Positions 12,954 through 59,400 of a stretch of 64,000 nt of DNA are shown here, piece by piece. This DNA is from Schmidtea polychroa (lineage: Eukaryota). The notes beneath the pieces were generated by a model. The model did not search any database, was not told the origin of the DNA, and saw nothing but the letters and a program-made list of their open reading frames with translations. Both the position numbers and the translations under genes were made by a program. Position 1 is the first letter of the stretch; every line of letters starts with the position of its first letter. Location of the stretch: positions 32,798,001 through 32,862,000 of the forward strand of contig CM097888.1 of NCBI GenBank assembly GCA_044892525.1. Direction: 5' to 3'.

Positions 12954-13996
12954 TGGTGGCAGCGGTAAACACGGACGCAATCACCGAAAGATTGCTACCA
13001 AATGTATTCTGCCAAGGGGACGATTTGGAAAAGTTCATTAAAAGATGCGAAATTTATTTCGACGCCAAGGGAATCACGCAGAAGAAAGACCAGGAAAGAT
13101 TAACATCTTGCATGATTGATGAGGATCTCCTGGAAGTGTACGCCAAAACACTGAAAAAAGCCGAAGGATTCCAGGCTAGGCGATTGGCATTCGATCGTGA
13201 AAGAGATGTTTTAAAGGATCTACAAAACTTGTTGAATTACAAGCGGAAGGGTGAAGAAATAGAAACGTATTTTTAAAAGGTGGAGGACCCTGTTGATAGG
13301 TTGTTCGAAAATAAAGAATTTACCAAAGAGAAATTAACAGCAAGGATGTTAATAGTATGTGCGGAGAATAAAGAAGTTGAGAAAGAAGTGATACTACGGA
13401 AGATAAAAAGCACAGAAGAAATAAAGGAAGCACTAACTCTGATGGACAAAGTAGACAAGCAAAGAGAGCAGATTAACAGTATGAAAAGTTACGCCAGAGT
13501 GGTCTATCAGGAACCACAGGGAAGAGTACAATACAAGAAGAAAGAACAGAGAGAAGAAAGTATCCGAAGAGAAATGCCAGAATGCTGGTTATGCCACAAA
13601 ATAGGACACACGAAAATTGATTGTCCAATAAAAGGTAAAATAAAATGCTGGACATGTCATAGAAGCGGACATATAAGTAGAAACTGTCCAGATAAAAAAG
13701 CTCCAAGATGTTTTGGGTGTGGGAAAGAAGGTCATATAAGAAGGTTGTGTCAGGAAATACGTTGTGAAAGATGTAGCAGAAATGGTCATAGATCCGAGGA
13801 GTGTTATACAAAGATGAGGTACGGGAGAGCGACGGAGAGACAAAGATTCACGGGAAACAGATACAGTCGGATAAATGGTATCGAGGAAGAAGAAGAAAGG
13901 GAATCGTGTGTAGAGACAAATGAAGATAATTTTAGGAAGACGTACCCAAACAACAGGGATCCACCAGTAGAGGATTTGGTTGGAGCCATATTCTAA
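12953..13996 (+). pseudogene. gag: gag with four CCHC zinc knuckles; in-frame premature TAA at 13274-13276
   Basis: ORFs 12875 and 13280 are in the same frame. Four Cx2Cx4Hx4C motifs at 13583-13804. An in-frame ATG inside the LTR (12906) is an alternative start. Confidence 0.9.
12954..12966 (+). promoter_or_regulatory. Primer-binding site, tRNA-Leu(AAG/UAG)-type
   Basis: TGGTGGCAGCGGT immediately after the LTR; complementary to the metazoan tRNA-Leu 3' end ...ACCGCUGCCACCA. Confidence 0.85.
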
Positions 13997-16900
13997 CAGA
14001 AAATTTGATGGGATATCCTCAAGGGGCAGAAAAGTGGGAGAATGTTGGAAGGGTAAGCGAGAAAGTATACAGGTTCCTAAAGAGAGAAATGTTTGAAGAG
14101 GAAGTGGAAAGAATTAGAACCATTGAAACGGAGCAGGTTGTTGAAATTTTGTATAACAGAATGCAAGGAAGGCCTAGTATAACAGTAAGGATGAATGTGG
14201 AAAATTTCGACTGTTTATTAGACACTGGGGCAAGAATCAATGTAATGAGTGTGAACTGTTTCAACAAGCTACGAGGACAACAATTGACAAAAAGTGACGA
14301 TAAGTTACGATGCGCAAACGAGAGTACGATCGAGACAATAGGAAAAACGAAGGTGCAAGTAACCATTGGAAATGTTTCGAAGGAAGTTATATTCATTGTG
14401 GCGGAGAAAGTGACACCAGACGTGATTGGAGGAATCGAATTACAAGAAACATTTGGATTTGGACTGTTAAAAATTAAAGATATCGAGGCTAGTGAAAAAG
14501 ACAAGAACTATATTTGTAACATTGAAGCAAAATTTGGCAGAAAAATAAAGGATGAAGAACGATTGATACGAGCGTTGGAGCAGTTAAAGATCAATGAAGA
14601 TAGCAAATTAAAGGAAATTATAACAAACAGTGGAAACGTGTTTATGGCAGATAAATGGGATGTGGGTCGCACACATTTGGTAAAACACAAGATAGTTACA
14701 AGAGGTGAGCCGATAAACATAAAACCATATCGCCAACCACTAAATTTGGAATCAAAGATTGAAGAAGCAATACAAAATTTGTACGAAAATGGAATTACAC
14801 GGAAATGTAACTCTCCATGGAATACACCGCTAATATGTGTATGGAAAAAAGAGAAAAAGGATATTAGACTATGCTTGGACTTTAGACAGCTGAACGCGGT
14901 AACAGAGAGGCAGGCATTTCCAATGCCAAACATAGACGAGATGTTGGATTTGTTAGGAGGATCCGTCTTTTTCAGCTCAATCGATCTAGGTAATGCATAT
15001 TACCAAGTGGAACTAGAAGAAGAATCACAGGAGAAAACAGCTTTCTCAACAAAGAACGGACAATATTGTTTCAACAGAATGCCGTTTGGAATTGCAGCAG
15101 CACCAGGTACGTTCCAAGAAATGATGACAAAAGTATTAGGCAAAATAAAGGGAGCAATGGTGTATTTGGACGACATCTTGATTTATTCAAGCAGTAAAGA
15201 GAAACACTATACAATACTCGGAGAAGTGTTAAAGGCGATTGAGGAAGCAGGCCTAAGGATTAATCCAGAAAAATGCCAAATAATAAAGGAAGAAATCAGA
15301 TTCTTAGGAAACATAATCAGCAATGAAGGAGTACAGACAGATCCATCTAAAATTCAGGCCATACAGAACTTTGGGAAGCCTAATTGCGTAAAGAAACTCC
15401 GAAGCTTTTTAGGTATTTGCAATTATTATAGAAGATTCATCAGTGATTATGCAAAGAAGGCAAGGATTTTAGAACAATTATGTAGCGGACCAAGTAACAA
15501 AAAATTAGAATGGAGTGAAGGAACGAATAGCGTGTTTGAGGGATTGAAATTAGCACTCACGACGGCGCCAATCTTATGTTTTCCGGATCTGAAAAAGGAG
15601 TTCATTTTAGATACCGACGCTAGTTTCGATACCATTGAAGCAGTACTTTCACAAAGAGATAAAGATGGAAAGGAAAGAGTAATTGCGTATGGATCACACT
15701 CGATGACGAGTCACGAGAAAAGATATTGTATTACAAGAAAGGAACTATTGGCGGTATATTATTTTTGCATTCATTTTAAGCACTATCTCTACGGAAGAAG
15801 ATTCACGCTCAGGACAGACCACAAGGCAATCACGTTTATGATGACAACCAAGAAGCCGATTACTTCACAATTCCAAACATGGATCAATTATTTGAGCAGT
15901 TTAGATATAAGAGTAGAATACAGAAAGGGTATTAATCACCAAAATGCAGACATGGTCTCGAGAACTAAATGTGTCACGTGTGTTCAATGTCAAATGGCCC
16001 ACGAAGAAGCTAAGAAAGGAAAGATAAAAACAAGATTACTAGACTCGATCAGAGAAGAGGGAAGAAGCAACATCCAACATGGAATTGTAGAAGAAGTACG
16101 AAAGAAAACGATGATACCTGAAAATGAGTTACAAGAAACAATAAAGGAAATACATAGACTATTGTGTCATGCTGGAGTCGAGAAGATAGCCGATTATATG
16201 AAAGATAGATATGTTGGAAAACACCTGTGGAGTAAGATTCAGGAGATTGTTCGAAGTTGTGAGATTTGTCAAAAAACCAAGGCTTTAACAATAACAACGA
16301 AAGAACCAGTAAAAAGACAAGATTCGAAGGAAATGTTCGAAATTATATTCGTGGATATATGTGGACCGTTGGCAGAAACAAAAGGACGTAAGAAGTATAT
16401 ATTGGGCATAATAGATCAGTATAGTAAGTATCAAGTCTTGACAGCGATAACAAAACAAGACGAAGAAACAATAAAGAAAACGATTTTAGAAAAGTGGATT
16501 TTAAGATTTGGATGCCCAAAGGAGATAAGAGTTGATTGCGGAAAGGCGTTTGAATCAGGAATGATGAGAGAATTCACAAAGATGCTAGATATTAAATTAT
16601 GTTTTTCGAGTCCATACCATCACCAAACAAACGGTCAGATAGAAAGACAATTCAGGACAATACGGGATTTGATAAATGCTACTTTACAGGATAAAAAGAA
16701 GACGGATTGGGCAGAGATATTACCAGAAGTCGAATTCACTTTAAATGCAACCAAACAAAAAAGGACAGGGAAAAGCCCGGCAGAGATAGTTTTTGGAAAA
16801 AAGATTAGCAGGGAAAAATAGTACGGGTCCAAAGAAATACCGATAAAGGAAGAACTAAAAGAACAAACAAGGAGAAAATTCAATGTAGGAGAAGAAGTAT

Positions 16901-29380: not shown

Positions 29381-29718
29381 TTTACATTTTTTAACCTTTT
29401 TTGCTAAATTATTTATTATATAAATCATAAATCAATGTAAATGAATGATTAAATAGTTTTTATCTATTTAAAATACTTACAATTATAAAATAATTTGGAT
29501 AAATGTTATGGTTAAAATTTCTTACAGCTTGTTTTAATAAATTGACTTACTTATAAAGTTTTATCATTAAATTTCAAAATATTTAATTTATTGATGATTA
29601 TTTTGTAATGTAATATATTTTGTTGGAAACTTATTATAAAACATTTGAATGTCTTTTAATAATTTTGAATATTAAATTAAATGAATTATGTTTTAATATT
29701 GATAATTCTATATTTCAG

Positions 29719-30922
29719 TATCAAATCCAAGAAAAATGAACAAAGAAAATCCTTCTTTACAAAGAGATCAAATCAAGCGTCCGAATTTTCACAAATTAGT
29801 CAACTCACATTCAAATGGGCTTTCATCTCCTTTTCCATTTATGGAATTCGGTTTGAGCAATCAGTCTAGTCTTAATTATGTTTTCAATAATTTTTCTCGC
29901 GAGTTTGTAAATTCAGTTAAATCTTCATCAAGCATATCCGATACGCAAAATCCAAAAAAATCAACCTTAATAGATCCATATTTAAAACCTTTAAGTTTAG
30001 ATCGTTTAAAATCAGCCAATGTATTAAACAGAGAGCCCATTAATAATTCTCATAATTCAAGTCATGATTTTATCAAATCATCAAACAATAATTTGAAAAA
30101 TAACGATTTTTCTGCCAATTTCTTTCTGCGAATTCAGTCAACTAAAACTGATAATAATGCAGAAAATTTCCAAAGAAAATCGAACGAAATATTTAGAAAT
30201 GGTGAAATGAAAAGCACTCAAAATCCATCAAACGGAGTTAGACCTTTCTACCGAGAAAACTATCCAGGTGCTACCTTGTTAACACCAAAAGTTCCAGTAG
30301 TTTTCAAAGAAATGAAGAAAGAATCGTCACTGCCATCAAACCAATTAGAACTCTCAAAGTATTCCATCCGACCAAATACGGCAGGTCCTGCTATCAAGTC
30401 ATTAAAAGATTCAATTCCAGTCTCTTTGGCACCCCCGACGCCTAAATTTTATGTCAAGTCTTTCAAAACCGAAGAATTAATTTACAATCCAACCGTAAAA
30501 TCATCTGAAACGATTCCAACAGAAACCAGTTTAGAATCGAATTTTAACTCAAATCGAAAAATTTCAAGTCCTCAAAATCTTTATCTGCAAGTCAAACAAG
30601 AAGTCGAAGAATATCGAAAACAGCGAAGAAAAGAAACACTGTTGGATGTTAATATTATTCCCGAAATCAAAACAGTTGCGTCTGAAGATCTATTTCCCAT
30701 AACTTCATCTGGAGATACTCAGTCTAATATTTATCAAAATAAAGCTACTATAATTACAAAATCCGATAAAAAGAATTTACAAGAAACCATTTCAACAAAT
30801 GCTGAGAAAAGTTTCATTAAAACAGAAATGAAAGACAATTCTAACGAGAAAATAACATCAAGACCAAAAAGTGTGACTTTTAATGACAAAATCGAAACAA
30901 GAGATTTTTGTGACGAATCCAG
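29719..30922 (+). CDS. TTLL4: Large low-complexity N-terminal exon, probably of TTLL4 (ATG 29736)
   Basis: Acceptor tttcAG at 29717-29718, open S/N-rich frame, donor AG|GTAAAT at 30923. Phase 2 end fits exon 35245. The link to TTLL4 is by splice phase only. Confidence 0.65.
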
Positions 30923-31397
30923 GTAAATATTAAATTTGTCGAATCTGTTTTAATAAACTTGTTTTATGAGGTAATCATCAGCTATAAATGGTTTTTATAA
31001 CACTTATTACACCGACTGCCAGTTATTAATAATTTAACCAATAGCAAGGCGCGCACACACACACACACTTACAAAGATCTTACATACGTAAGTATACATA
31101 AGTTATTCTTAACGAGTGTGCGAGCGGACCACCGTGCAAGGTTCTATTCAAGGGGGGGTAATAATTGCCATTCTGGTTGCTAATAATATTAATTAGTTTT
31201 AATGTCCGGCTTAGCTCAGAATATTATTTAAAGCGAATTATGTGAGAAAACAATTTTGTTTCAAGTGGTTTTTGACATCTTTAACTGTTAAAAATAAATT
31301 TACGGTTTATTAGTAGAATGATAACAAAATCGATATTTTATAACAAGAAATATAAATAATGAAGGAATAAGGCTCATAAAACAATGGGACGTAAGTC

Positions 31398-36600: not shown

Positions 36601-39439
36601 CAGGCATGAGCAACTTGTTTTTGTTAGGGGCCAGTTCAGTCTTTGAAAATGTTTCGGGGGCCGGATGTATTTAGCACGAATTTATTAATATATATTCCAA
36701 TAATATATCTTTTTAATAGCAAAGATCATTTAAATTTACAATATTAAGCATATATTATATATTATAGATTATATATTATATACTATATACTAGTTGTTAT
36801 TGGAAGGCAAAATATACAAACTATGAAAATACCCAAATTTAACTTTAATAATCCCATATTTATAGTTTATTTACTCGCACAAACTCTGGATTGTTCGAAT
36901 TTATATTTTTTATGCTTCTCAAATTTGCATATACTACTCAAATATACCCAACATATCAATATCAATCTTGTTCTGGTTTTGGTCTGTGTGACATTTGACA
37001 CTTTTTATCACGACATAAATCTGAAATATTTGCCTTGATAGTTGATGTTGCTACTCGTAATTCGTTTGACAAGTTATCATCAGTGAGCCGACATCTTTTT
37101 TTGCACTTTGTTTGTTTCATCTTAGAAAAGAATTGTTCACAGATGTAAGTGCTGGGGAAAAGTGAGACCATTTTCAGCGCATGATATCGGATTGATGGAA
37201 ACGCTTTCTGAGAAATGTAGAGTTTGTAGAATTGAATCAAAGAGACGTCACGAAACTTTCTTTCCAGATCGCCATTACACTGCAATTCAATGAGCTCCAT
37301 TTGCATTGATTCTGGTGCTATCTCAACATTAACACTGAATGGTTCAGAAAATAGTTTGAAATCATTTTCATGTTCGGCAAAATCAGCAAATCTTGAAGAA
37401 AACTGTGTTTTCAATGCAATTATGTGTTCATTAAATTTCTTCGTGTTAGCTAAATTTGCAACATTTTTGCAATCAGTTAGATTTGGAAAATGCACCGTAA
37501 TGTCCTTTGATAATTGATTCTCCCATAGTTTTAGCTTTGTCTGAAATCCTTTGATATGATCATAAAGATTATTTATCAGTTGATCCCGGCCTTGTAACTT
37601 CGTGTTTAGATCATTCAGATGCGTTGTGATGTCAACCAAAAAGGCCAAGTCAAGTAGCCAATTTGCATCGGATAACTCCGGAATTGGTTTCGACTTCATC
37701 TCCATAAAAAGTTTAATTTCTTCACGAAGTCAATAAAAGCGATGCAATACTTTTCCTCTGCTCAGCCAGCGAACTTCGCTAAAGTAAATTACATCCGAGT
37801 ATTCTGTCTCAATGCTAGTGAGAAACTCTTTGAATTGTCGATGATTCAATCCACGTGATCTTATGAAATTCACGGTTTTCACAACAACTGTCATCACATG
37901 GTCCATCTTTAGTTCTTTTACACATAAATTCTCTTGGTGGATTATGCAATGTGATGCAATTAATTGCTCACTTCCTTTCATTTTAACTAGCTCCGCCTTC
38001 AATAAACCAACTACTCCATTTTTTATTCCAACCATTGCCGGAGCTCCGTCTGTCGTTATTCCTGTTAGTTTTGGAAGAAAAAGCCCGTTTTCTGCCAATG
38101 CAGTTTTGATTTCATCAAAAACATCTTCTCCAGTTGTAGTCCCTTTCATGCTCGCTAATTTCAACAGTTCTTCCGTAACGTGGAAGTCCTGATCAACCCC
38201 ACGCACAAAAATTGCTAACTGCGCGGTGTCTGTCATATCCGTGCTTTCATCAAGGCATATTGAATATGCTTGAAATAGTTCAGCTTTTTCTTTCAAGATT
38301 GTTTCAATGTTTTTTGCAATATCATCAATTCGTCTTACGATTGTAAATCGAGAAAGGTTGATATTCGAGAAAAGTTGATTTTTTTCGGGACAGATACAAT
38401 CCACAGCCGCATCAATGCATTCTTTGACAAACTCCCCATCAGAAAACGGTTTCAGTTTCTTGGCAATTATCTCACTTATCATGAAACTCGCCTTCACAAC
38501 ACACTCAACCTCTTTATTAACTTTGATAAAGAATGTCTGTTGCCCTAGAAGTGCTTTTCGGAGAGATTCGATCCTATCTTTCCTTAATTGTCCCTGTATC
38601 TGATCGAACTTTTCTGCATGCTGAGTCTGGTAATGCCGTCTTACATTAAATTCCTTTTTAACGGAAATTGATTGCGAGCAAACAAGACAAACGAGCATAT
38701 TGTTTGATTCTACAAACAGATAATCCGATGTCCACTTATGATTAAATACTCGGTGTTCACTGTCAACTTTTCGTTTTTTTGTAATAGTGCTCATCCTCAA
38801 CTGTGGTTCATCAGAATTATTGGAAATATCAGTGGAATGTTGCCCATGCCTGATTTATATGGACACAATGAAAAATAAATAAATATTCAACTTACATTTT
38901 TATTTAAAAATTGTAAATTTCAAATGAAAATAATTTGATAAAATAAACAAATCTTTTAAAAGTAATTATTAAAACGAGAAGGAATAATATTAAATTAGAT
39001 AAACCAAAAACAAATACTGAAATCCTTAATTAGCTTATTTCATCTATTACTACATTTATAAACCTATATCATTTTTGATAAATGATGAGAATTACAAACT
39101 TTATCGATAGAAAATTTCTTTTACGATTTATAGTTTAAGATTTATAAATATTTTGCAATAAAATTCGGTCTTCGCTTATGAGATTTTATATTACTGAATC
39201 TTGTTCATAGACAAAAGATGTTTTCATGTTTATGCTACTATAATGAAAATGTCATAATTAAAAAGTTTACTGCTGCACCACCACGCTTATATTAAATGCG
39301 TATTTGTACTAATGGTGTAGCTCTAACGTCAACTGCATACATTCCTGAAAGCTTATCAAGGGCCTGGTTATATGGTGTGGATCAATGAACACTGGGGCCG
39401 GTCAAAAGAGGCTCGCGGGCCGTATGTTGCTCATGCCTG
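36601..39439 (-). mobile_element. Buster-family hAT transposon (SPIN/GTF2IRD2-like), full length
   Basis: Perfect 14-bp TIRs CAGGCATGAGCAAC (36601-36614, 39426-39439). Left flank GTCTAACT has the Buster-type central TA. The right TSD is lost in the gap. Confidence 0.95.
36962..38794 (-). pseudogene. SPIN-like hAT transposase (~610 aa) with a single in-frame TGA at 37730-37732
   Basis: KKRKVD..CLVC..RRHYQTQH zinc finger, LDESTD, TDGAPAM, HCIIHQE, EVRWLS, TYICEQFFS. The two ORF-track pieces are in the same frame. Confidence 0.92.
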
Positions 39440-39757
39440 NNNNNNNNNNNNNNNNNNNNNNNNNNNNNNNNNNNNNNNNNNNNNNNNNNNNNNNNNNNNN
39501 NNNNNNNNNNNNNNNNNNNNNNNNNNNNNNNNNNNNNNNNNNNNNNNNNNNNNNNNNNNNNNNNNNNNNNNNNNNNNNNNNNNNNNNNNNNNNNNNNNNN
39601 NNNNNNNNNNNNNNNNNNNNNNNNNNNNNNNNNNNNNNNNNNNNNNNNNNNNNNNNNNNNNNNNNNNNNNNNNNNNNNNNNNNNNNNNNNNNNNNNNATG
39701 TCTAACAATAAAATAAGATAAACATTACAAGCTTTGTGATACCCAGTGCAAGTCCCA

Positions 39758-39799
39758 ATAGTAGCCTAGTTTCGAGCTTTTGGCTCTCATCAGTACTAT
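39758..39799 (-). ncRNA. Minimal type I hammerhead ribozyme, copy 1 (cleavage triplet mutated to GGC)
   Basis: Minus strand: ATAGTA-CTGATGA-GAGC(CAAAA)GCTC-GAAA-CTAG-GC-TACTAT. Confidence 0.8.
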
Positions 39800-40128
39800 G
39801 CAGGAGACGCGAAGATTTCTATTCGCGCCAGGTAAGTATACAATATTGCTGATTCAACTCTATTGCATACTTTGCCTGTTACACTAGACATCACATCACT
39901 TGCAAATTCGCTACATCACAGAATAAAAATATCTGCAAACTTGTAAACATGGCGTATGAAAAATCATACTCGCCCCTTGAGACACCGTCATACACAGAAA
40001 CTGTTTACAAGTGCATCCGTAAACCTTTAGCATTTTTAACTTGTAATGGATTAAAATACTTTTTACGAATGTCTAACAATAAAATAAGATAAACATTACA
40101 AGCTTTGTGATACCCAGTGCAAATCCCA

Positions 40129-40170
40129 ATAGTAGACTAGTTTCGAACTTTTGGCTCTCATCAGTACTAT
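40129..40170 (-). ncRNA. Minimal type I hammerhead ribozyme, copy 2 (intact)
   Basis: Minus strand: ATAGTA-CTGATGA-GAGC(CAAAA)GTTC-GAAA-CTAG-TC/TACTAT. 6-bp stem I, 4-bp stem II, palindromic stem III (ACTAGT), canonical GUC site. Confidence 0.9.
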
Positions 40171-41947
40171 ACAGGAGACGCGAAGATTTCTCTTCGCGCC
40201 AGGTAAGTATACAATATTGCCGATGCAACTTTCGCAACTAGTTCGAAACTAGTCGACTATTGGGATTTGCACTGGGTATCACAAAGCTTGTAATGTTTAT
40301 CTTATATATATATATATATATATATATGAAAGCAATATAAGAGAATGAAATAATTCTAATAACGAAAATATTTTTTCTATTTTGTGAACATGATAAATTT
40401 CATAAATCCAATAAAATTCTTTTTTGAATGATGGATTTTTATTTGTTTTAAAACAAGCATACATTGAAAATAAATTGTGAATATTTATATTTTTGTATCG
40501 AATTTCAAATACCTTTACTCATAACCAACAAATGCTATGGAAATAATATCAACAATATTTCTATGACACTTGAGAATGCATAACCTTTTGAATTATTGGA
40601 ATTTTAACACAACTCAAGTTTCATTTAGTGAAATTTATTTGCACAATATATTCTTGACGTCAATATTTTTTATAAAATCTTATTTTTTTAATTTTAAGAG
40701 TAATATTTAACTCTTAGTTGGCCAAGAAAAAATAAAATGAATTTAATGACCGAATGTACTTTCCAGTATAATCATATTTGGTATCTTCAGTGTTTTGACA
40801 AATATCATTGTTTTGTGATCATCAAGGTTAGAGGTACGTGCAAATTTTGTTAAATTGTCATAATGTGGGTTGATATAATATATTTCGTATGAAGTACCTA
40901 GAAGTACCGACGGTCAACTAAGGGTTAGAATGGAAAATAAATTTGATTTTTGTCGTATTATGTTGTGATCCCTGTGTTGTGGGTGAACTATTAAAAGGAA
41001 ACTAATAATTGAAACTAATAATTAAAAGTTGAAAATGTATTACCTTGAAAATAACAAAGTATGGTGATAAAATTGCAAGAAAACAGTATAGTCTCCTGCT
41101 GAAACAATTGATAATCAGAAAATCAGTTATATCATATATTTGCATGTTATATATGGCTCCTAATTAAATGCAAACTAAATAATCCCATTTTGCACACTAA
41201 AAAATTAACATTTGCTAACTATTTTTTGAAAACTAAAAAAATGATTTTTGCACACTATTAAATACTTATTTGCTAACTATATTTTGCAAATTAAAAAAAT
41301 GATTTTTGCACACTATAAAATCGATATTTGCTAACTATGTTCTGCAAACTAAAAAATAAATATTTGCACATTATTTTCAAAAATATTTGTACATTATAAA
41401 ATAAAAATTTCAGATATATTTCAATGAATAAAAAAGCATAGAGATTACAATTTATTGTGAATGCTTAAATACAACAATTTATAGACATTTAAAAAATGGT
41501 TTAACAAAATGTTTTGTATGATGGCTGCATTTTATTTGCACTAGATATAATAAATTTTTAGTTCTACTGCAACAGCAATGCTTTTCTCGCTTTTGCAGGG
41601 CGACCTCTCCTTCTTTTGGTTCCAATTGGAACATTTTTCGCTTCGGTTGGAGGGGCTACAAGCTTTAGTCGAATAGCTAATCCAACAATGTGTTTGCAAA
41701 ACATTTTTTTAAAAAAAGAAGGGCAGTTACAGTCTCCGTTAATCCAGTCATTTTGATCTTTTGGTAAAATAGTAGTCCATGAAAGAAATGCATTAATTTT
41801 AAACTCATCAAACGTTTCCCAGTTGTCAATTCCATCGTAGGTTTCTGTCAAATCTTTTGCAGCAATTTTGTAAACAACACCACTCTCTGTTGACTCTGGA
41901 GAAATGGTTTTCTTCAACTTTGTCCACTGGTATGAGCTAGTCCAAAG

Positions 41948-44383
41948 TAGGGTTTCTGGATACTGTTTAACAGTAACAGTAAAACAGTTGTTTTTTCGTA
42001 AAAAAATCAAAAACAGCAAACAGCTGTTTTTTCATAACTGTTTTTAACTGTTTTTCAGTAAAACTTAAAGTTCACTGTTAAAAAAATGACGGGTTTTCCA
42101 GTCATTAAGAACCAGAAAACACGTCATTCAGCGTTCTTTTCTCAATTTTTTCTGAATTGACCTGTCTCGCGTCATTTAATCGTCTTAACCCGTCATTTAC
42201 GCATCATATGCTAGGCAAATCAATGGACAGCCTTTGCTCAACATGCCACACAACGCGACCGCTTTCCATTCAAGGTCAACAGTCAATGCATTGTTTAGAC
42301 GTCTAGACATAGCACCACTTATATATAAATGAACAGCACTGGTTTGTGTTTATTTTCACATTATAAAATAAGCATTGCAACTTTTACTGAAATAAATATT
42401 TTTACCGATTTAATTATTTTCAGTAATAAATCAACGATTTTAATTTGTTTTAATTGTTTTAAATGATTAATTTTCTATTAGTAATGGCTTCTGTTTGGGA
42501 ATTTGCCACAAAACGACGGAATCCGCACACAAAAGAGCTTGAAGGTCAATGCAATCGATGCAATAGCATAATTAAGTGCTCTGGATATTCAACGACAACT
42601 TTAAAGAGACATCTACAGCAGCATGGCATCAAGTTTGATCAGGCTGGGGAACCAAGCACATCCAAGAATGGAATTCAGACCGAAAAGAGACAAAAAACTG
42701 TTGCTGACTTTTTTGAACGAGAATCTCTCAAAGAAATTGTGTCAGACATGGCAACGGATGGAGTAACTATTCGAGCAATAACAAGAAATAAGTTCATTAG
42801 AAAATCCTTAACACGCGATGGTCACAAATTGCCTGCGAATGAAACTGATGTCATGAAACTATTGCACGATGATTTTGAAGAAAAACAGAAGAAAATGGTT
42901 GATGAGATTCAAGCGAAGGTTGCGAAAGGTATCAAGTTCAGCATGACCGTCGATGAGGCTACAACTTTACGTGGTCGTCGATATTTCGGAATTAATATTC
43001 ATGACTATGAGAGAGATTCCAATAAAACTTATAAGACAGGCCTCGTGCGGATTCTCGGTTCTTGCAACACTCTTAGCATGATTGAAATTCTTCGAGATCA
43101 TCTCAAATCGTTTGGCATTTCAATGGAAAAAGATTTGGTTGGATCCACACAGGATGGAGCTGCAGTTAATCAAAGATTTATCAGCCTCATTGATGTTATC
43201 GGTCAGTTCTGTCTCAATCACGGTTTACACCTTGGAGTATATGACACTTTGTACAAAAAGAAATCAGAAATTGAAGAACCCATCATCATTGATGAAGATT
43301 CAAATGAGGAAGATAATTTTGATGAACCAACCGATTTTGAATTAATCAATGAAAACCATAATGAGATCGATTATCATGAAATACTCAAAAAGTCTCGCAA
43401 GATTGTCAAATTCTTCAAACATTCACCTGTTCGAAATCATGTGCTTCAATCAAATATCAAACAAATTCACTCTCGAGAAATTGAACTGCATCTGGATGTG
43501 AAAACACGCTGGAATTCAATCCCAACCATGCTTGAACCGTTAATTAAAACCGAAGCATCAATTCATGAGACTCTTCAGGATTTCAAAGCACTCGATCTGC
43601 TAGCAGCAATGGAGCCAGTTAAGCTAGCAGTAGAGAATCTTAGCAGAGAGGACTCAACTTTAATGAGCGCGGATACAATTTTAAATTTTATGTTCACAAA
43701 ACTATCGAACATTAAAAATGAAATTGCAGAGAAATTACTGGAAAATCTAAAGCAGCGAGTTGGTGAAAGACTCAATCCCGACCTAATGAATCTCTTACGC
43801 AGCCTGAAAGATCCATCGATTGTGCCTTCGAGAAACACGATTAATTTTGCAGGAAGTCTTGCAAAACGACTATTTGAAGTTGCTGACGAAGATACTGGCG
43901 ATCAATTACCTCACGAAGAAATATCTGTAAATTTATCAATGCAGGAGGAACTAAATGCTTTGCTTCAAAAAAGTGAAACTACAGTCACGCCAGCTAATGA
44001 TGCTGTCAAGTGGCTAAAGTCGGAATTTACACTTTTCAAGAACACTGGACAGCGAACTGAAAACCTACAAAAACTCTTTAATGCCATTTTGACCATCAAA
44101 CCCACTTCCACGGACGTAGAACGCGTTTTTTCGGTCACCTCAAGTTTTTGCACCTAAATTCGATCTCGTCTATCAGATAAATCACTGCAAGCATTGGTCT
44201 TTTTGAAATATTATTATAATAAATCAAATAAATAATTAAAAGGCTTTAATTTCATATTAAAAAGTTTTTTTCCTTACATTATTTACAGTAAAAACATTTA
44301 AAAACAGTAAAACAGCTGTTTTTTAAAGAATCAGAAACAGTTAAACAGCTGTTTTTTGAAACCACTGTTTTTCAGAGTCCCTA
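41948..44383 (+). mobile_element. Ac-type hAT transposon nested in the MULE
   Basis: TAGGG...CCCTA imperfect TIRs, 8-bp TSD GTCCAAAG (41940-41947, 44384-44391), many subterminal AAACAG/CTGTTT repeats. Confidence 0.93.
42484..44235 (+). pseudogene. hAT transposase (BED finger, DDE, dimerisation domain) with a premature TAA at 44155-44157
   Basis: CNRC..TLKRHLQQH, TVDEAT, QDGAAVN, CLNHGLHL, TRWNS, TSTDVERVFS. The frame continues IRSRLSDKSLQALVFLK to TAA 44233-44235. Confidence 0.9.
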
Positions 44384-46581
44384 GTCCAAAGTTCCAAGTC
44401 AATTTCTGGTTCGGTTTTGATGACTTTAATTCCAGATTCGTAATTGTTGGACCACCTTTCAATCCAATCAACCAATCCAACAGTAAATCTTGATAGTGAG
44501 ACTCGCTCTCTCATAGAATCTTCATCTTTCATGACTCGGTTGTATGCCTCAAGGGCATTGTTTGTGCTAGGTGTTAGTTTTTTGGCACCTTCAAACCAAT
44601 TTTTATTTGATTTCAGCCATTCAGCTGTGAAGTATTCGACAAACTCCTTGTTTGCCTTCCACTTTTTCAAGAATAAAATTGATACTTTTTCAAAAACTTC
44701 TCTGGATTGACTGAGTTGCAAAGAATCAATGTCAGACAAAATTTCCTGTCTTGCATCTTTTGGAATCAAAGAATCCACTTTTTTCTGAACATTTTTTTTC
44801 ATATGAGCCCAGCACATAATCACCAATACGTCTTTGCCAAACACTGCTATGAAAGAGTTTTGGATGCTTTTTGATGCATCAGAAATAAATGTGCTTGGAT
44901 TGAAGGGAGCATTGAAGATTTTAGGAACTTCATTCTTCAATGCAGTAAACAAAAATTTGAAGTCCTCAGTTTTTTCATCGGTGCATACTCCAATACCAAA
45001 ACAATGAAACTGGCGATTGCGATCTGTTGTACCAATAACAAGAACAGGGAAGCCTTGCCATACAAGTTTGTATGTAGCATCTGCATGAATGTTGTCAGCG
45101 TTTAAAGCCATTTTCAACATTGTTTTGGATGAAATGAAGTACCGGAAATATCCAGTGTCCTCATATTTAATTTCATATGCAACAACAAATGCTTTGTTAT
45201 CTGCTTCTGGAGCAGCTGAATGAATTTGCAACCACTGATTTAATTTTCCAAGGCTAATGATGTTGGCACCATATTTGGACTTTCTCAAGGATGCCAGATG
45301 ATTATTCAGTTGTGTTCTAACATTGCTTTTGGTTTCAATTTTAAAGCAAACAATTTGTCAATTTCAGCTTTGACGGTATCTGTCATTGTTGTTCTTGTTT
45401 TGATGTTGTCACAATCATGTGCATGTCCTGATCTGTATAGAACAACATCACTAGTGCTGGACTCGTACCACAAGTAAACTGAGGGTGAACATTGTTCCCC
45501 ACGAAATTTAACACGATTACAGCGGAAAAACCTCTTTTTCCCCTCTTCAGTTTTATTTGTCCGAAAACAAGACCACACTTTTTCGTTTTTTACAAAATCC
45601 TCAGCTTCATTTGAACTTGCAAATGCATTTGCTCTTTTCCAGTCTTTGCAAATTTTTTTCCTTCGAGTTTCAAGTTTTAAAACGTGTTCTTCATCTTCAT
45701 TTCCTGAAGAACAGTATTCTGGAACAAAGTCAAACTCTGAATTTTTTTTAAATTCCACCATTGCTATAACGACAAAGAAGTATTTATTATGAATAAAACA
45801 AACATAGTTAGAAAATAATTTATTTAGCTTTTATTTATTATAGTTTGCATTATTTATAGTTATTATTTATAGTTAGCATTTATTATTTATAGTTAGCATT
45901 TATAGTGTGCAAATACATTAAAATAGTGTGCATTTAAATTGTAGCGGTTATATATTAGCACCAGGTTTCTTACAACATCCTAATTGAGGACGACACAATT
46001 TTCAACTTATCAATTTTCTTCACTAGTTTAAGATCTAAAGAGTGGAAAAGCTGCTAAATATGCTTAGGGACTTAAGATATCAATTATGTTATGTTGAATA
46101 TTTTTTTGAGATTCCAAACAAGTATTAAAAGTCGATTTAATCAAAGGCAATATAAACTCGTATTACTACATTGATGTTATCAATGAAATCATGAGTATTA
46201 TGACATAAGCCAGGAACCCAAAATTTTATTTGCTCTATATGAATAGTCCTTTCTACATATTCCACTGAACAAAAATAGTTGTAAAAAATGTTATTAAGCT
46301 TGTAGCAAAAAGAAAATGCGTCCAGCATCATACAAAGATGCTTCTAGGGTATTAAATATACAATTTATAAACCTAATCTTTTATTAGCATGTAATTATTA
46401 TAATAATAATGCCAATGTTAATTATTAATAATTCTAGGAATGATAACAATAATTTTAAGGAGTTGTTCATCTTTTTTGTTGTTGTAAAATAATTAATTAG
46501 CATAAATTACTAATTTTATAGCCGATTATTTTGTATTTATATATAAATTATAAAAGTATTTAATAAGAAACTATTTTTTAG

Positions 46582-55716: not shown

Positions 55717-56278
55717 TTCTTGGTAGCAGAATTAATTAAATGTGAAACAAGTAAATATAAATGATAATAATGCAAATAAAAATTCATATCCAAATTTTTG
55801 CGTTATAATTATAATTTTAATTATAAGGTATATAAATTTATAATTTACTAATTTTGTTTGTTTTTAAATAAAATAAATAGATTACAGTTAAAAGCACTCT
55901 TGATATTTAAAATAATTTCTATGGTGGACAATTTCTCGTAGTCAAAAGTCGCCTACAAGACTTGTAAGTTTTTTCATCTCAAATAAAAACCTTTTTCTGC
56001 AAAGTATATATTCAATAAAATTAATTAATCAAAAATTTAAGTAAAAACGCCAATTTTGGCCTTTTTTTTCAAAACATTTTCCCTGTGCTTTCAGTAGATG
56101 AACATTTGTATAAATCATTCATTTTTGAGGTTTTTAATTTAAAAATTATAAAAAAGGACGCACACTCACTTGTTTCTATTATACAGACCAGGACATAAAT
56201 GTAGCATTAATATTTATTATTTTTTTATAATAAATTTTTTTATATATATTCTGTTTTTATTTAATTTAATAATTGAAG

Positions 56279-56473
56279 GTAAACCATTTTCCTGGATCAT
56301 TTCAACTTGGTCGCAAAGACAGGTTGTGGCGTAATATTTATCGAATGCAACAAGAAATTGGATCTCATGAATTTGATTTTATTCCTCAAACATTTTGTTT
56401 ACCTACAGATTTGGAGTTATTCAAACAATGCTGGGAGTCTGGAGGCAGTAAACATAAATGGATAATTAAACCA
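56279..56473 (+). CDS. TTLL4: TTLL4 exon, TTL catalytic domain (VNHFPGSFQLGRKDRLWRN...KWIIKP)
   Basis: Diagnostic TTLL4 motif NHFPGSFQxGRKDRLWRN, phase 0-0. Confidence 0.95.
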
Positions 56474-59400
56474 GTATTTTTATAATTTTAATTAATAACT
56501 TTCAACCCAGATATCCCTACAGTCTTTTTTATAGAGGCATATATTCAACGTATTTAGGGTTAATTTCCATACTTTTTAAAAATGACGCTAAAACTTTTTA
56601 TTTGGGTTTTTCAATTTTAGTAGCTAGCTGTGTGGACTCCAGCCCAGGAGAAATCCTCGATTCTCATAGAGTGGAGTATTTATTTTGGGGACTCCTACTT
56701 TTTTAGAACCCTATAAACTTTTTTAATCAATGATTACGTAACATTTATTAATTTTCATTTTAATCAATGATTGTTTAATTTTTAAAATTTTGTTTCAATC
56801 GATGATTATGTCATTAATTTTAATTTTTTATAATAACTTCAAAGACTATTGCTTGAAATTAAATTCTATGGTATAATCAAAATTTTGAAATTTCATTTTT
56901 AGTACACCATCTTTGAATTTATACATTCATATATACTTAAGAAAATCCATTCTACTATTAAAAAATCATATTAAAAGACATTAAAAAACTAAACGCATTT
57001 CTCTCTGGTTTTTATAAATATTTAGTTTTTATAATGTCTTTTAATAGTGGAATGAGTTTTCTGAAGTATAGCTAAATAATTTGTATTTTTTAAATATTGG
57101 AAATTTGGTATATGTAAAAGTTGGGTGAAAAAGCGCTGTTTAAGTTGTTATGACTGCAAATTTGAAATAAGTAATAAATCAACTAATAATAAAATTAATA
57201 CAAAACATTTGAAATAATTGAAGAATTAGAAAATGAATATTCAATGAACAAAATGAATTCTACCATTTGTAAACTTTATAATGTTCATTAAGTGACATAT
57301 AAAATTTATGGACATAAAAAAGGCATTAGAGATGAAAAATATTCTTATTTTAATTTTCTAAAAAATTTCCGATTAGTAGAATTTTTAAAATATTAGTTTA
57401 TTCTACTATACGAGTTTTTTGTGACAATAACGGAATTAAACAATCATTTATCTGGCGTTATTAATTGTTATCTATTACTTATTATTACCATGAAAAATAC
57501 ACCTAAGTGAAATCTTTTGTTCTAATCACTACAAATTAAAGCCAATAGAAATCTCTGATTGTTATCAAAATAATTTTTTGTTTTTATTCAAACAAGTGGT
57601 TGTCATACCAAAACTTTTGACAGTCAGGTGTGTAACTGTTTAATTGTTTTAATAAAACATTGTTCAATTTTGTATAAATAATGAATTTAATTTGTTTTTT
57701 CGAGAATTAAACAATTTTTAACTTATTATTGTTTGTTTTAATTGGAAAATCAATCATTATAATTAGTGTTATGATTATATGTAAATTATTAATTAAAATT
57801 ATTAATAATAATTGAAAAGATTCGATGCGTGTATGTTATTTCATGGATGGACAACGAATGGATAATAATGGTTTGTAATTAGATCATAGTTTTCTGATTA
57901 TTCTAGATTATTCAAGAATTGAAAATGTGTTTAAAGTGTTTTTCGCTGATTTGTCATTATATAAATCATTAATTTAAATTAGAAATAGAAATTGAAAGAA
58001 TCTCTCATCAGAAATTGACAGTTATCATATAGTCATTACCATGTCTAGGTGAGGGTAAATAAAGCACACCCAGATCTTTGATAAAGAGAGCTTTAAATTC
58101 CGTCTACATAATATGAAATAATACGTTCTACGAATATAACTTTGCAAAAATATTAATTATGACGACATTATTAATGAATTTGGTGAAATGAAATCAAAAG
58201 TCATTAATTTTTAAAACTAAATATTCTTCCATAAATAAAATGGTCCATAATATATAAATTTCACAAAGTAAAATGAAAACGAAACTGTCATAAATTTAAT
58301 GAACCAAAGCTATTAATTATATTACATGAGTACAACAACCTCAAAATCATTGTCAATTATTTTTCGGTGAATTACTATTATTTTATCTATGCTGATATCT
58401 AACGGAATCTTCTGCATATAAATCTCTTAAATGGATTCTTCTGTTAACCTTTTAGTCGCGTCTGTAAAATTATTAGCCAATAATCATGGGCTTAAATTGC
58501 CTTTAAATAAAAATTCAAACATTCTTAACCCTCAATTTTAACCCTTAAAAGACACGAAACAACTGTGATATAGGATTAAAAAGTTGATTATGTATAGCGG
58601 CGTTATTTGCGATGAAAGGGCTAATATTGAAAGACTGATTTGCGGACTATTGGCCATAAGGCGAGCGCCTCTTGCTTGAAATATTTATTCTCAACTCCGA
58701 TGCTGCACCAGATATAATTTTGATTGACTGAATTTGCAGCGATGGGCGCCTTTGCCTTTCGTTTTCCAAAAGCAAGAATTATAGGAAGCTGCTTCCATCT
58801 TACCCAAAGCGTTATTCGTAAAGCAAGTGATGTATCTTCGAGTCATAGCATTTTTGAAATATGCTTGAATTAATAGATACTACTTTAATTTTAACTCGTT
58901 AAATTAAATTTTTGTGTAATTTCGTTTTTTCTTAGAAATAGGATCAAGTTTCCTATGACCAATGATCTCTATGGTCAACCGACCTATAATTAAAAATCTT
59001 GTGGTCAACATACAGTCTACAAAAAGACTGTTTTAAATGTTTGACTTTGTATATATTGGTACTGATTAGCAGTTTGGGTTGTCAATTTATTATCTACATG
59101 TACTCTTTATATTCTAAACATTTAATTAAAGCGAACATAATCTGTGAGTTGCATTATATATATTCTGTGATTTATAATAAAGATATTGAATGTATTATTA
59201 AAATAATGAATTTTATTAATCTTCTGTGTTAATAGTTGAATTTTATTTTTCCTAATTCAAATTATTAGTTATATTTTGACATATAATCATTACCTTTTCC
59301 TATGTACAATGTTCAACGAAAAATATCTCTTAATTCAATATATAAAGAAAATTGAAAATAAACTAGGCATATAATCTTAACTCAAAAGGATACAAGGGTA

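What the first reader, a model, noticed from the sequence alone, without database searches (positions are those of the whole stretch)
39698..40230. 371-nt tandem unit carrying a minimal hammerhead ribozyme: candidate retrozyme / circular RNA
Seen: two head-to-tail copies at an exact 371-nt offset, the first starting at an assembly gap that may hide more copies. Each has a type I hammerhead on the minus strand. Copy 2 is intact (CUGAUGA, GAAA, GUC site, self-complementary ACUAGU stem III); copy 1 has GGC at the cleavage site. The unit has no ORF but has further helices: TGCA(A)ACTTGTAAACA pairs with TGTTTACAAGTGCA, enclosing the GGCG-TATGA-AAAA-TCATA-CT-CGCC hairpin. Known: minimal hammerheads with palindromic stem III cleave as dimers and occur in Penelope pLTRs and in non-autonomous metazoan retrozymes that make small circRNAs. 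Inference: this is such a family, sitting antisense in a TTLL4 intron and plausibly mobilised by the Penelope-like elements seen nearby.
Basis: partly seen in the sequence, partly recalled or inferred. Interest (0 to 1): 0.8.

Follow-up and report, generated by a model that had tools for sequence, protein, structure and literature searches.

The report
Decayed hammerhead retrozyme-type retroelement insertion
This is a worn-out copy of a very abundant, gene-less 371-base mobile element that carries a self-cutting hammerhead RNA motif and was inserted in the tangled way typical of Penelope-like retrotransposons; it is a good example of a known kind, and this copy probably no longer works.

Summary
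A 162-nt stretch recurs at an exact 371-nt offset (96% identity), starting at an N gap. Each copy carries a minus-strand type I hammerhead: copy 2 has GUC, copy 1 has GGC.

- A 66-nt inverted, 5'-truncated copy (40240-40305) abuts a (TA)n tract.
- A hAT DNA transposon ends exactly at the other side of the gap.
- Read depth puts the family at roughly 10^3-10^4 copies per genome.

The layout is (TA)n, inverted truncated copy, 5'-truncated unit, full 371-nt unit, then the start of a third unit. This is the published insertion signature of Penelope-like elements, and no ORF lies between the ribozymes. So this is a non-autonomous, retrozyme-type element, not a pLTR pair around a hidden ORF.

This locus is probably inert. 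Copy 1's cleavage triplet is broken. Copy 2's ribozyme can be buried in a 66-bp hairpin with the inverted arm.

Family-level RNA evidence is suggestive only. One probable RNA run holds a closed assembly cycle of about 379 nt made of rare variants.

No Penelope ORF was found in the window. A TTL-family exon lies 16 kb downstream on the + strand, but intron status is unproven.

The scan noted this family before on other DNA of this genome. Verdict: new member of a known kind, modest interest.

The parts
39440..39697 (.). Assembly gap (258 N), left untouched. It separates the element from a hAT transposon end.
   Evidence: N runs
39698..39712 (-). First 15 nt of a third unit (minus-strand reading UUUAUUGUUAGACAU). 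It follows the 3' end of the full unit and runs into the gap.
   Evidence: Identical to 40069-40083. The unit terminus at 40084 is inferred from the inverted-arm boundary and from contig loose ends (table 7).
39713..40083 (-). Full-length 371-nt non-coding unit, read 40083->39713. It contains a 5' variable part, a hairpin carrying the U1-like 13-mer, a GAAA-loop hairpin, the hammerhead and a 51-nt tail.
   Evidence: No Pfam match and no long ORF. GC 36.7% against 28.4% for the window.
39758..39799 (-). Hammerhead copy 1. The core and helices I and II are intact, but the cleavage triplet is GGC (39766-39764) instead of GUC. Nearly all family contigs carry the GUC letter at 39765.
   Evidence: table 3 (39765: 239,277 of 239,605 depth units in X5 read the other letter)
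39822..39885 (-). 64-nt hairpin whose 3' arm is the 13-mer identical to the 5' end of U1 snRNA (39827-39839). On the + strand the same bases read as a consensus 5' splice site, CAG|GTAAGTAT.
   Evidence: -24.6 kcal/mol, z -6.1; exact 12-mer twice, 0.13 expected with up to 1 mismatch
39809..39826 (-). GAAA-tetraloop hairpin, copy 1, with one mismatch in the stem. The family-majority letter at 39821 gives a 7-bp stem, as in copy 2 (40180-40197).
   Evidence: table 3 (39821)
40084..40232 (-). 5'-truncated upstream unit: the 3' 149 nt only. Together with the full unit it forms the pseudo-LTR-like partial tandem.
   Evidence: similarity to copy 1 ends near 40230-40232
40129..40170 (-). Hammerhead copy 2. 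The motif is complete: CUGAUGA, GAAA, GUC, with cleavage predicted between 40135 and 40134. Helix II has a G.U pair caused by a rare letter at 40147.
   Evidence: Hammerhead_1, 25.2 bits; table 3 (40147: 98% of family depth reads the other letter)
40231..40241 (.). Short stutter linker at the turn between the truncated unit and the inverted arm. It is a near-duplicate of the next 11 nt.
   Evidence: period 11, 2.1 copies, 40231-40253
40240..40305 (+). Inverted 5'-truncated copy: the last 66 nt of the unit, from helix II of the hammerhead to the 3' terminus. It has 1 mismatch to copy 2 and 4 to copy 1, and shares copy 2's rare letters.
40303..40327 (.). (TA)12.5 microsatellite abutting the 3' terminus of the inverted copy. 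Probable insertion target.
   Evidence: PMC8557442 reports (TA)n as a preferred target of several PLE clades
36601..39439 (-). Context: hAT-type DNA transposon with perfect 14-nt terminal inverted repeats. Its right end is the last base before the gap.
   Evidence: I17: CAGGCATGAGCAAC / GTTGCTCATGCCTG; zf-C2H2_12 and DUF4371 in its ORFs
56273..56482 (+). Context: exon encoding the start of a tubulin-tyrosine-ligase (TTL) domain. It shows that the TTLL gene runs on the + strand.
   Evidence: NHFPGSFQLGRKDRLWRN motif; PF03133 TTL, E 5e-14, profile positions 10-73 of 292

Best explanation
The locus is one old, complex insertion of a roughly 371-nt, ORF-less, hammerhead-bearing non-autonomous retroelement. 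It is of the metazoan non-LTR retrozyme type and most likely depends on Penelope-like elements (PLEs).

Read on the minus (sense) strand it consists of:
1. a (TA)n target;
2. an inverted 5'-truncated copy (66 nt);
3. a 5'-truncated unit (149 nt, hammerhead with GUC);
4. a full unit (371 nt, hammerhead with GGC);
5. the first 15 nt of a third unit, which runs into an assembly gap.

Proposed life cycle of the family:
1. More-than-unit transcripts are made.
2. Two hammerheads pair through the palindrome ACUAGU and cut after GUC. (Inferred from the motif and from published behaviour of such ribozymes.)
3. Unit-length RNA with 5'-OH and cyclic-phosphate ends is closed by a host tRNA ligase. (Inferred from published coral, mussel and axolotl retrozymes.)
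4. A PLE reverse transcriptase copies the RNA at a nick in (TA)n. It jumps templates to give head-to-tail units, then snaps back to give the inverted arm. (Inferred from the layout and shared variants here.)

Shown here: the anatomy, the intact motif, the very high copy number, the excess of 3' parts over 5' parts, and a (TA)n / AT-rich terminus. Not shown: cleavage, circles, and the autonomous partner.

This particular locus is probably dead. Its downstream cleavage triplet is mutated, and its upstream ribozyme can be locked in a 66-bp hairpin.
For: **Anatomy**
- Direct repeat at offset 371, and a 66-nt inverted arm 98% complementary to copy 2.
- (TA)12.5 lies at the arm's terminus.
- The similarity between the two copies starts at about 40232.
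- This equals the PLE insertion layout in PMC8557442: partial tandem forming a pLTR, an adjacent inverted 5'-truncated copy, (TA)n targets, and assembly problems.

**Ribozyme**
- The full Hammerhead_1 model is matched.
- The pattern is expected 0.02 times per window by chance.
- Family-majority letters give GUC at 39765, a perfect helix II at 40147 and a 7-bp GAAA hairpin at 39821 (table 3). The family's commonest form therefore has all motif elements intact, and each local copy carries private damage.

**Non-autonomous**
- A complete ribozyme-to-ribozyme period has no ORF and no Pfam match.
- The far side of the gap is a hAT end.

**Abundance and dispersal**
- DNA run X5 shows flank depth of about 48 against 180,000-855,000 summed over the unit, with 5,882 contigs laid.
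- Run X1 shows flank depth of about 298 against 0.85-3.2 million, with 14,775 contigs laid.
- Dozens of contigs end at 40083-40089 and continue into unrelated AT-rich DNA (tables 1, 2, 7).
- The 3' 150 nt is several-fold more abundant than the 5' part, as expected from 5' truncation.

**Shared variants**
- The inverted arm and copy 2 share two letters that copy 1 lacks. One of them is seen in only about 2% of family depth. This fits a snap-back copy from the same template and a template jump to a different RNA for the next unit.

**RNA**
- The minus-strand monomer folds to -112.1 kcal/mol as a circle (z -5.5), against -71 for the + strand.
- In probable RNA run X11, a 322-nt contig is permuted across the unit junction. 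Its ends (39873 and 39937) are bridged by two 117/118-nt contigs with overlaps of about 30 nt.
- That is a closed cycle of about 379 nt at depth 82-95. Contigs that carry flanks have depth 4-5.
- The cycle's letters are rare or absent in the DNA runs (tables 3, 4, 8).

**Literature**
- Units of 150-450 bp, low GC, type I hammerheads, tandem copies and coexistence with PLEs define metazoan retrozymes (PMC7229834).
- Retrozymes group with PLE pLTRs in a phylogeny (bioRxiv 10.64898/2026.07.22.740005).
Against: - No cleavage, circle or strand-specific transcript was demonstrated.
- In RNA run X7 the depth profile tracks the DNA profile at a ratio of about 0.01. For a 10^3-10^4-copy repeat this could be genomic DNA carry-over or intronic read-through. 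The silent flank is uninformative at that ratio.
- The X11 cycle would also arise from a transcribed tandem array. The run type is only guessed ('RNA?') and contigs have no direction.
- The hammerhead scores below Rfam's gathering threshold.
- No PLE ORF is in the window, and I could not retrieve an autonomous element sharing this 3' end.
- No other copy could be fetched for covariation analysis.
- Family-majority letters break 11 of the 15 varied positions that are paired in this copy's global fold. The long-range 'rod' is therefore not supported; only the local hairpins are.
- The left junction and any target-site duplication are hidden by the gap.
Confidence: 0.78

Rival explanations
1. The repeat is only the pseudo-LTR of an autonomous Penelope-like element whose RT/GIY-YIG ORF is hidden in the assembly gap.
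For: - Copy 1 runs into a gap of nominal size.
- PLE insertions are known to break assemblies (PMC8557442).
- Other first-reader notes in this genome mention GIY-YIG remnants next to hammerheads (untested).
Against: - A whole 371-nt period from one hammerhead to the next is visible and has no ORF. After it the unit simply restarts (39712->39698).
- The 5' non-coding part of the unit is itself present at 180,000-570,000 summed depth in X5. The short form is therefore the common form.
- The sequence on the other side of the gap is a hAT terminal repeat, not PLE coding sequence.
Confidence: 0.05
2. It is a piece of non-mobile hammerhead-bearing satellite DNA, like newt satellite 2. On this view it expands by unequal crossing-over and not by retrotransposition.
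For: - Head-to-tail units with one type I hammerhead each.
- The gap may hide more units.
- A closed assembly cycle is seen in the reads.
Against: - The inverted 5'-truncated arm, the truncated first unit and the defined terminus at (TA)n are insertion footprints.
- Thousands of contigs have distinct AT-rich flanks at one terminus, and 3' parts exceed 5' parts.
- Other notes from this scan report about 370-bp single insertions with 12-14-bp duplications (not tested here).
Confidence: 0.07
3. The element is, or encodes, a U1 snRNA mimic: a self-processed small RNA that uses its AUACUUACCUGGC stretch to bind 5' splice sites.
For: - An exact 13-nt match to the U1 5' end occurs in both copies.
- No family variant of 10% or more was listed inside it.
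- The same module was noted many times in this genome.
Against: - There is no Rfam U1 match.
- The 13-mer is internal, about 65 nt upstream of the cleavage site, so hammerhead cutting does not expose it as a 5' end.
- It is the 3' arm of a stable hairpin, so it is not free to pair.
- No Sm site or U1 stem-loops were recognised.
- A recently amplified family conserves everything, so conservation here says little.
Confidence: 0.03

Closest known systems
Metazoan non-LTR retrozymes (coral, mussel, axolotl; Cervera & de la Pena 2020, PMC7229834)
   Same: - ORF-less unit of 150-450 bp (here 371).
- Low GC (36.7%).
- One type I hammerhead per unit, in head-to-tail copies, with thousands of copies per genome.
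- The hammerhead has a short palindromic helix III that needs a second copy, as in axolotl.
- The genome also reportedly holds PLEs.
   Different: - The sequence is unrelated to the published mussel Mg353, coral and axolotl units.
- Most family members appear to be 5'-truncated or hairpin-type fragments, not long arrays.
- Circles are not demonstrated.
- It carries a hairpin with a U1-5'-end-identical arm next to the ribozyme. None of the papers searched mentions this.
Penelope-like element pseudo-LTRs with hammerheads (Cervera & de la Pena 2014, PMC4209133; Craig et al. 2021, PMC8557442)
   Same: - Ribozyme near the 3' end of the unit.
- Partial tandem plus an inverted 5'-truncated copy, a (TA)n target, and assembly breakage.
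- Opposite-strand hammerhead pairs 100-700 bp apart are described for Schistosoma PLE remnants.
   Different: - No RT/GIY-YIG ORF lies between the repeats.
- The ribozyme has the canonical 6-bp/4-bp helices and a 2-bp helix III. The helix-III-less min-HHR typical of many animal PLEs has a long helix II instead.
- No 30-40-bp tail was recognised, only a 9-11-nt stutter.
Newt satellite 2 and Schistosoma Sm-alpha hammerhead repeats (from general knowledge; both contribute to Rfam Hammerhead_1)
   Same: - Repeats of about 330 bp with a type I hammerhead.
- Thousands of copies.
- Transcripts that self-cleave as dimers or monomers.
   Different: - Different sequence. The match to the Rfam model built on them is sub-threshold (25.2 against 34 bits).
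- Insertion footprints here point to retrotransposition, not satellite expansion.
Plant LTR retrozymes (PMC4918200)
   Same: A non-autonomous retroelement whose RNA is excised by flanking hammerheads and circularised.
   Different: Plant elements have type III hammerheads, true LTRs, PBS/PPT, 4-bp target duplications, high GC and Gypsy-type mobilisation. None of these is present here.

Membership tests
Hammerhead ribozyme, type I | Conserved core: CUGANGA, GAAA, and an A15.1-U16.1 pair | tested here: met
   Copy 2 has CUGAUGA ... GAAA ... with A15.1/U16.1. In copy 1 the core boxes are present but position 16.1 is G.
Hammerhead ribozyme, type I | Cleavage triplet NUH | tested here: met
   Copy 2 has GUC (40137-40135). 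Copy 1 has GGC (39766-39764), so the feature is not met for that copy.
Hammerhead ribozyme, type I | Open helix I and closed helix II | tested here: met
   Helix I is AUAGUA/UACUAU (6 bp), with a UCCU/GGGA extension. Helix II is GAGC/GUUC (copy 2) or GAGC/GCUC (copy 1), with loop CAAAA.
Hammerhead ribozyme, type I | Score at or above Rfam's gathering threshold | tested here: not met
   25.2 bits against 34 for RF00163. There was no hit in the whole-window gathering scan.
Hammerhead ribozyme, type I | Self-cleavage activity | not testable with these tools
   Needs in vitro transcription of natural monomer and dimer.
Metazoan non-LTR retrozyme | Head-to-tail repeats of 150-450 bp, each with a type I hammerhead, low GC, and no ORF, LTR, PBS or PPT | tested here: met
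   Period 371. One full unit plus a 149-nt truncated unit and the first 15 nt of a third are visible. GC is 36.7%. The longest stop-free stretch is 79 aa with no Pfam match.
Metazoan non-LTR retrozyme | Many genomic copies | tested here: met
   Summed contig depth is 10^3-10^4 times that of the single-copy flank in two runs. This is not a calibrated copy number.
Metazoan non-LTR retrozyme | Unit-length linear and circular RNA in vivo | tested here: inconclusive
   The family is present in two probable RNA runs. X11 shows a closed cycle of about 379 nt at depth 82-95, made of rare variants. X7 tracks the DNA profile. There is no strand, end or RNase R information.
PLE-type insertion (non-autonomous PLE derivative) | Partial tandem (pLTR) with an adjacent inverted 5'-truncated copy | tested here: met
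   compared with PMC8557442
PLE-type insertion (non-autonomous PLE derivative) | Insertion into (TA)n or another microsatellite | tested here: met
   (TA)12.5 lies at the arm's terminus. Family loose ends at the same terminus are AT-rich (table 7). The other junction is hidden by the gap.
PLE-type insertion (non-autonomous PLE derivative) | Sequence shared with the 3' end of an autonomous RT + GIY-YIG element in the same genome | not tested
Only untested notes from other windows exist.
U1 snRNA | U1 stem-loops and Sm site in addition to the 5' end | tested here: not met
   No Rfam U1 match at E up to 10. Only the 13-mer matches, and it is paired within a hairpin.

The most novel reading that the evidence does not exclude
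The hairpin conserved next to the ribozyme may not be incidental. On the element's sense RNA it presents the exact 5' end of U1 snRNA. On the antisense strand the same bases form a consensus 5' splice site, CAG|GUAAGUAU. That site lies 38 nt downstream of a pyrimidine-rich ...CUCAUCAG, which is the antisense of the hammerhead core. Thousands of antisense intronic copies such as this one could then act as U1-recruiting sites or as poison-exon modules that shape host splicing. Alternatively, the sense RNA could titrate 5' splice sites or U1-binding factors. A mobile ribozyme family wired into the splicing machinery has not been described in the papers searched.
Probability: 0.06. Interest if true: 0.7.

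Novelty: new member of a known kind. Interest (0 to 1): 0.3.

Why it matters
This is a clean, annotated example of how hammerhead-bearing short retroelements insert: a partial tandem, a snap-back inverted arm and a (TA)n target. It adds sequence-level support for the recent proposal that animal retrozymes are non-autonomous riders of Penelope-like elements.

The family makes up a noticeable fraction of this AT-rich genome. Recognising it will explain many 'hammerhead', 'U1-like' and 'long hairpin' observations elsewhere in the scan.

The shared rare variants between the inverted arm and the adjacent truncated unit give a small mechanistic clue about template use during integration.

The locus itself has no evident present function.

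Tried and rejected
- **External copies.** I looked for other copies to test covariation. Exact-pattern scans were run with the hammerhead, the U1-like-plus-hammerhead spacing and the invariant tail. The collections were metagenome contigs, viral contigs and bacterial/archaeal genomes. The only hits were 16 chance matches without a ribozyme.
- **Other copies in the window.** None was found. The second loose hammerhead pattern, at 18535, is a chance match.
- **Published sequences.** Text searches for the ribozyme sequence found nothing relevant. The mussel, coral and axolotl retrozyme sequences in the PMC7229834 supplement are different. No supplement text is held for PMC8557442.
- **Penelope ORFs nearby.** All stop-free segments of 85 aa or more outside already-identified elements gave no RVT or GIY-YIG domain.
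- **Global rod-like fold.** The fold is significant for this copy (z -5.5), but family-majority letters disrupt most of the varied pairs. I keep only the local hairpins.
- **Energy-model co-folding of two ribozymes.** It gave domain-swapped duplexes and did not resolve the helix III dimer. The dimer argument therefore rests on the ACUAGU palindrome and on the literature.
- **Sense-strand intron.** I considered an intron next to helix I, as in Drosophila virilis Penelope. The 5' arm of the hairpin is only a poor 5' splice site, and it is not one at all in the family majority. No GT..AG joint appeared in the RNA runs (table 5). Rejected.
- **Earlier findings by sequence.** The search returned nothing.
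Full report
**1. What is in the sequence**

The stretch 39698-40230 holds a 162-nt segment twice, at an exact 371-nt offset and 96% identity (differences listed). The first copy starts right after a 258-N gap at 39440-39697.

On the minus strand each copy carries a type I hammerhead:
- Copy 2 (40170->40129) reads AUAGUA-CUGAUGA-GAGC-CAAAA-GUUC-GAAA-CUAG-UC, followed by UACUAU.
- It matches the whole Rfam Hammerhead_1 model at 25.2 bits, local E 8.8e-4. The gathering score is 34, and nothing was reported in the whole-window gathering scan.
- Copy 1 (39799->39758) has a perfect helix II but GGC at the cleavage triplet.

A loose hammerhead pattern is expected 0.02 times per shuffled window. The only other hit, at 18535, has no helices and no Rfam support.

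The unit has no ORF: the longest stop-free stretch is 79 aa with no Pfam match.

**2.

- Just beyond copy 2 lies a 66-nt inverted copy (40240-40305). It is 98% complementary to 40084-40149 and ends in a (TA)12.5 tract at 40303-40327.
- Similarity between the two direct copies begins only at about 40232, so copy 2 is a 5'-truncated unit.
- Left of the gap, the last 14 bases (39426-39439) are the perfect terminal inverted repeat of a 2.8-kb hAT-type transposon (36601-39439). Its ORFs carry zf-C2H2_12 and DUF4371. The gap is therefore bounded by a DNA transposon end, not by Penelope coding sequence.

Read on the minus strand, the locus is:
1. (TA)n;
2. the inverted 5'-truncated copy;
3. a 9-11-nt stutter;
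4. a 5'-truncated unit, 40232->40084;
5. a full unit, 40083->39713;
6. the first 15 nt of a third unit, 39712->39698;
7. the gap.

The unit terminus at 40084 is fixed in two ways. It is the boundary of the inverted arm. Dozens of contigs in two runs also end at 40083-40089 and continue into unrelated AT-rich DNA (table 7).

**3. The family behind the locus**

Contigs of four public runs were laid on 39698-40897 at 85% likeness or more.

| Run | Type | Single-copy flank depth | Summed depth over the unit | Contigs laid |
|---|---|---|---|---|
| X5 | DNA? | about 48 | 180,000-855,000 | 5,882 |
| X1 | type not on record | about 298 | 0.85-3.2 million | 14,775 |

Summed contig depth is not a calibrated copy number. 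The order of magnitude is 10^3-10^4 copies.

The 3' ~150 nt (U1-like hairpin, GAAA hairpin, hammerhead, tail) occurs two or three times in the reference yet still has the highest depth. It is therefore several-fold more abundant than the 5' ~200 nt. This is what frequent 5' truncation would give.

The per-position table shows what nearly all family contigs carry:
- the GUC letter at 39765;
- the letter giving a perfect helix II at 40147;
- the letter completing the GAAA-hairpin stem at 39821.

So the commonest family form has every ribozyme element intact, and each local copy carries private damage. I report these as observations and did not assemble a consensus.

**4. What kind of element it is**

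The layout matches point for point the insertion architecture described for Penelope-like elements. That architecture comprises partial tandems forming pseudo-LTRs, an inverted 5'-truncated copy at the upstream side, (TA)n targets in several clades, and resulting assembly trouble (PMC8557442).

A complete period from one cleavage site to the next is visible, non-coding, and simply restarts. The unit itself is therefore the mobile entity. It is not the flank of a hidden ORF.

Its properties fit the published definition of metazoan non-LTR retrozymes (PMC7229834):
- size of 371 nt;
- 36.7% GC;
- one type I hammerhead per unit;
- head-to-tail copies;
- thousands of copies per genome.

A 2026 preprint places such retrozymes next to PLE pLTRs phylogenetically (10.64898/2026.07.22.740005).

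The ribozyme has a 6-bp helix I, a 4-bp helix II and a 2-bp helix III closed by only UA. It cannot close as a hairpin, and the whole ACUAGU is palindromic. PMC4209133 describes exactly this as the canonical metazoan type I that works as a dimer. The helix-III-less 'min-HHR' of many animal PLEs is a different form. The sequence differs from the published coral, mussel and axolotl units.

**5. A clue to the integration event**

The inverted arm differs from copy 2 at 1 of 66 positions and from copy 1 at 4 of 66.

The arm and copy 2 share two letters that copy 1 lacks. One of them, at 40147, is seen in only about 2% of family depth. Copy 1 has the majority letter at both places.

A single RNA template for all three pieces would require two back-mutations in copy 1. 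A simpler inference is this:
- The reverse transcriptase jumped from one RNA (the full unit) to the 3' end of a second RNA (the truncated unit).
- It then snapped back on its own product to make the inverted arm.

This is an inference from few sites.

**6. Can this locus make a circular RNA?**

Probably not.
- The downstream site is GGC.
- A minus-strand transcript starting upstream would contain the inverted arm. The arm pairs with the 3' half of copy 2's ribozyme in a 66-bp duplex (-136.6 kcal/mol, z -22).
- No depth was seen on the flank in the RNA runs.

**7. RNA evidence for the family**

- **Fold.** The minus-strand monomer (40134->39764) folds as a circle to -112.1 kcal/mol (z -5.5, 68% paired), against -71 for the + strand. 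This favours the ribozyme strand as the structured RNA. However, family-majority letters break 11 of the 15 varied positions that are paired in this fold. A fold derived from one copy is biased towards that copy.
- **Run X7.** This probable RNA run holds 445 family contigs, but its profile follows the DNA profile at a ratio of about 0.01. For a repeat this abundant, slight DNA carry-over or intronic read-through would explain it. At that ratio the silent flank would not assemble anyway.
- **Run X11.** This run is more telling.
  - Only five contigs are laid.
  - A 322-nt contig (depth 81.7) is permuted across the unit junction. It reads 39873->39712, then 43 nt, then 40042->39937.
  - Its two ends are bridged by two alternative contigs of 117 and 118 nt (depths 64.5 and 30) with overlaps of 27-30 nt. 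This is the overlap expected between neighbouring contigs built from 31-letter words.
  - The result is a closed cycle of about 379 nt with one two-variant bubble, at depth 82-95. The two contigs that carry foreign flanks have depth 4-5.
  - Several of the cycle's letters, and a 6-nt insertion, are rare or absent in both DNA runs (tables 3, 4).
  - This is what an abundant unit-length circle, or a highly transcribed tandem array of one rare variant, would give.
  - It does not distinguish between these two. The run type is only guessed, and contigs have no direction.

**8. The U1-like stretch**

The 13-mer AUACUUACCUGGC is identical to the 5' end of U1 snRNA. It occurs in both copies (39827-39839 and 40198-40210).
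- There is no other U1 similarity.
- It is internal to the RNA that ribozyme cutting would release.
- In the full unit it is the 3' arm of a 64-nt hairpin (-24.6 kcal/mol, z -6.1).
- On the + strand it reads as a consensus 5' splice site.

Many notes from this scan record the same module elsewhere in the genome. One follow-up judged it a retroelement fragment. I reach the same view, and leave a small probability for a splicing-related role (see novel case). No paper holding 'hammerhead ribozyme', 'Penelope-like' and 'U1 snRNA' together was found.

**9. Context claims**

A TTL-domain exon lies at 56273-56482 on the + strand. The ribozyme strand is therefore antisense to that gene.

I found no upstream TTLL exon. 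'Intronic' is plausible but unproven, and the paralogue (TTLL4 or another) was not tested.

No Penelope RT or GIY-YIG was found in the window. The mobile elements identified are:
- a Ty3/gypsy element (12.9-16.8 kb);
- the hAT transposon;
- a MULE (41.5-45.8 kb);
- a DDE_1 transposase fragment (1.7-2.7 kb);
- a probable mariner fragment, recognised by eye from its translation and not scanned (about 51.8-52.0 kb).

**10. Verdict**

It is a decayed, complex insertion of a very abundant retrozyme-type, PLE-style non-autonomous retroelement. That makes it a new member of a known kind.

The scan has already met this family on other DNA of the same genome. Those notes report a 370-bp insertion with a 12-bp duplication, a 362-nt tandem monomer and a 225-250-bp hairpin form. 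They agree with what I see here, but I could not test them.

Noticed in passing
window 9267-10793 (-), with 9444-9557 (-): An apparently intronless Shaker-type Kv channel ORF of 508 aa, with BTB_2 and Ion_trans domains. Its pore/S6 region matches Rfam K_chan_RES (potassium-channel RNA editing signal) at 87.1 bits. Many model pairs are non-canonical, so the score may reflect coding conservation and not the editing hairpin.
   Followed up: partly
window 36601-39439: A 2.8-kb hAT-type DNA transposon with perfect 14-nt terminal inverted repeats (CAGGCATGAGCAAC). It has two adjacent minus-strand ORFs (zf-C2H2_12 and DUF4371), which suggests a frameshifted transposase. Its right end coincides exactly with the start of the assembly gap.
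   Followed up: partly
window 39793-39839 and 40164-40210 (+ strand): Antisense to the hammerhead module, the + strand reads as a pyrimidine-rich tract ending in AG (the antisense of CUGAUGAGAGCCAAAAG). A 38-nt stretch follows, then a consensus 5' splice site CAG|GTAAGTAT. This gives an exon-like layout in the orientation of the TTLL gene. No spliced joints were seen in the contigs laid.
   Followed up: partly
window 40084-40305: The inverted arm plus the truncated unit form a 222-nt near-perfect hairpin (-136.6 kcal/mol, z -22). It resembles the 225-250-bp 'hairpin element' that another report of this scan calls the commonest repeat elsewhere in the genome. If transcribed, it would be a long dsRNA.
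   Followed up: partly
window 12863-16818 (+): A Ty3/gypsy-type LTR retrotransposon with a gag zinc knuckle, protease, RT, RNase H and integrase in long open frames. It is the only reverse transcriptase found in the window.
   Followed up: no
window 41567-45830: A MULE-type transposon region: MULE transposase domain, SWIM finger, and a 564-aa + strand ORF with a weak BED finger. In addition, a 406-aa ORF at 29706-30923 (+) has no Pfam match.
   Followed up: no
window 56273-56482 (+): An exon encoding the start of a tubulin-tyrosine-ligase domain (NHFPGSFQLGRKDRLWRN). The paralogue was not determined, and no upstream exons were located in the 16 kb between it and the element.
   Followed up: partly
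run X11: The RNA-run variant of the family carries letters and a 6-nt insertion (behind 39986) that are absent from the contigs of both DNA runs. This echoes the published remark that cloned mussel retrozyme circles match no genomic entry exactly. It may also simply reflect strain differences or variant loss in contigs.
   Followed up: no
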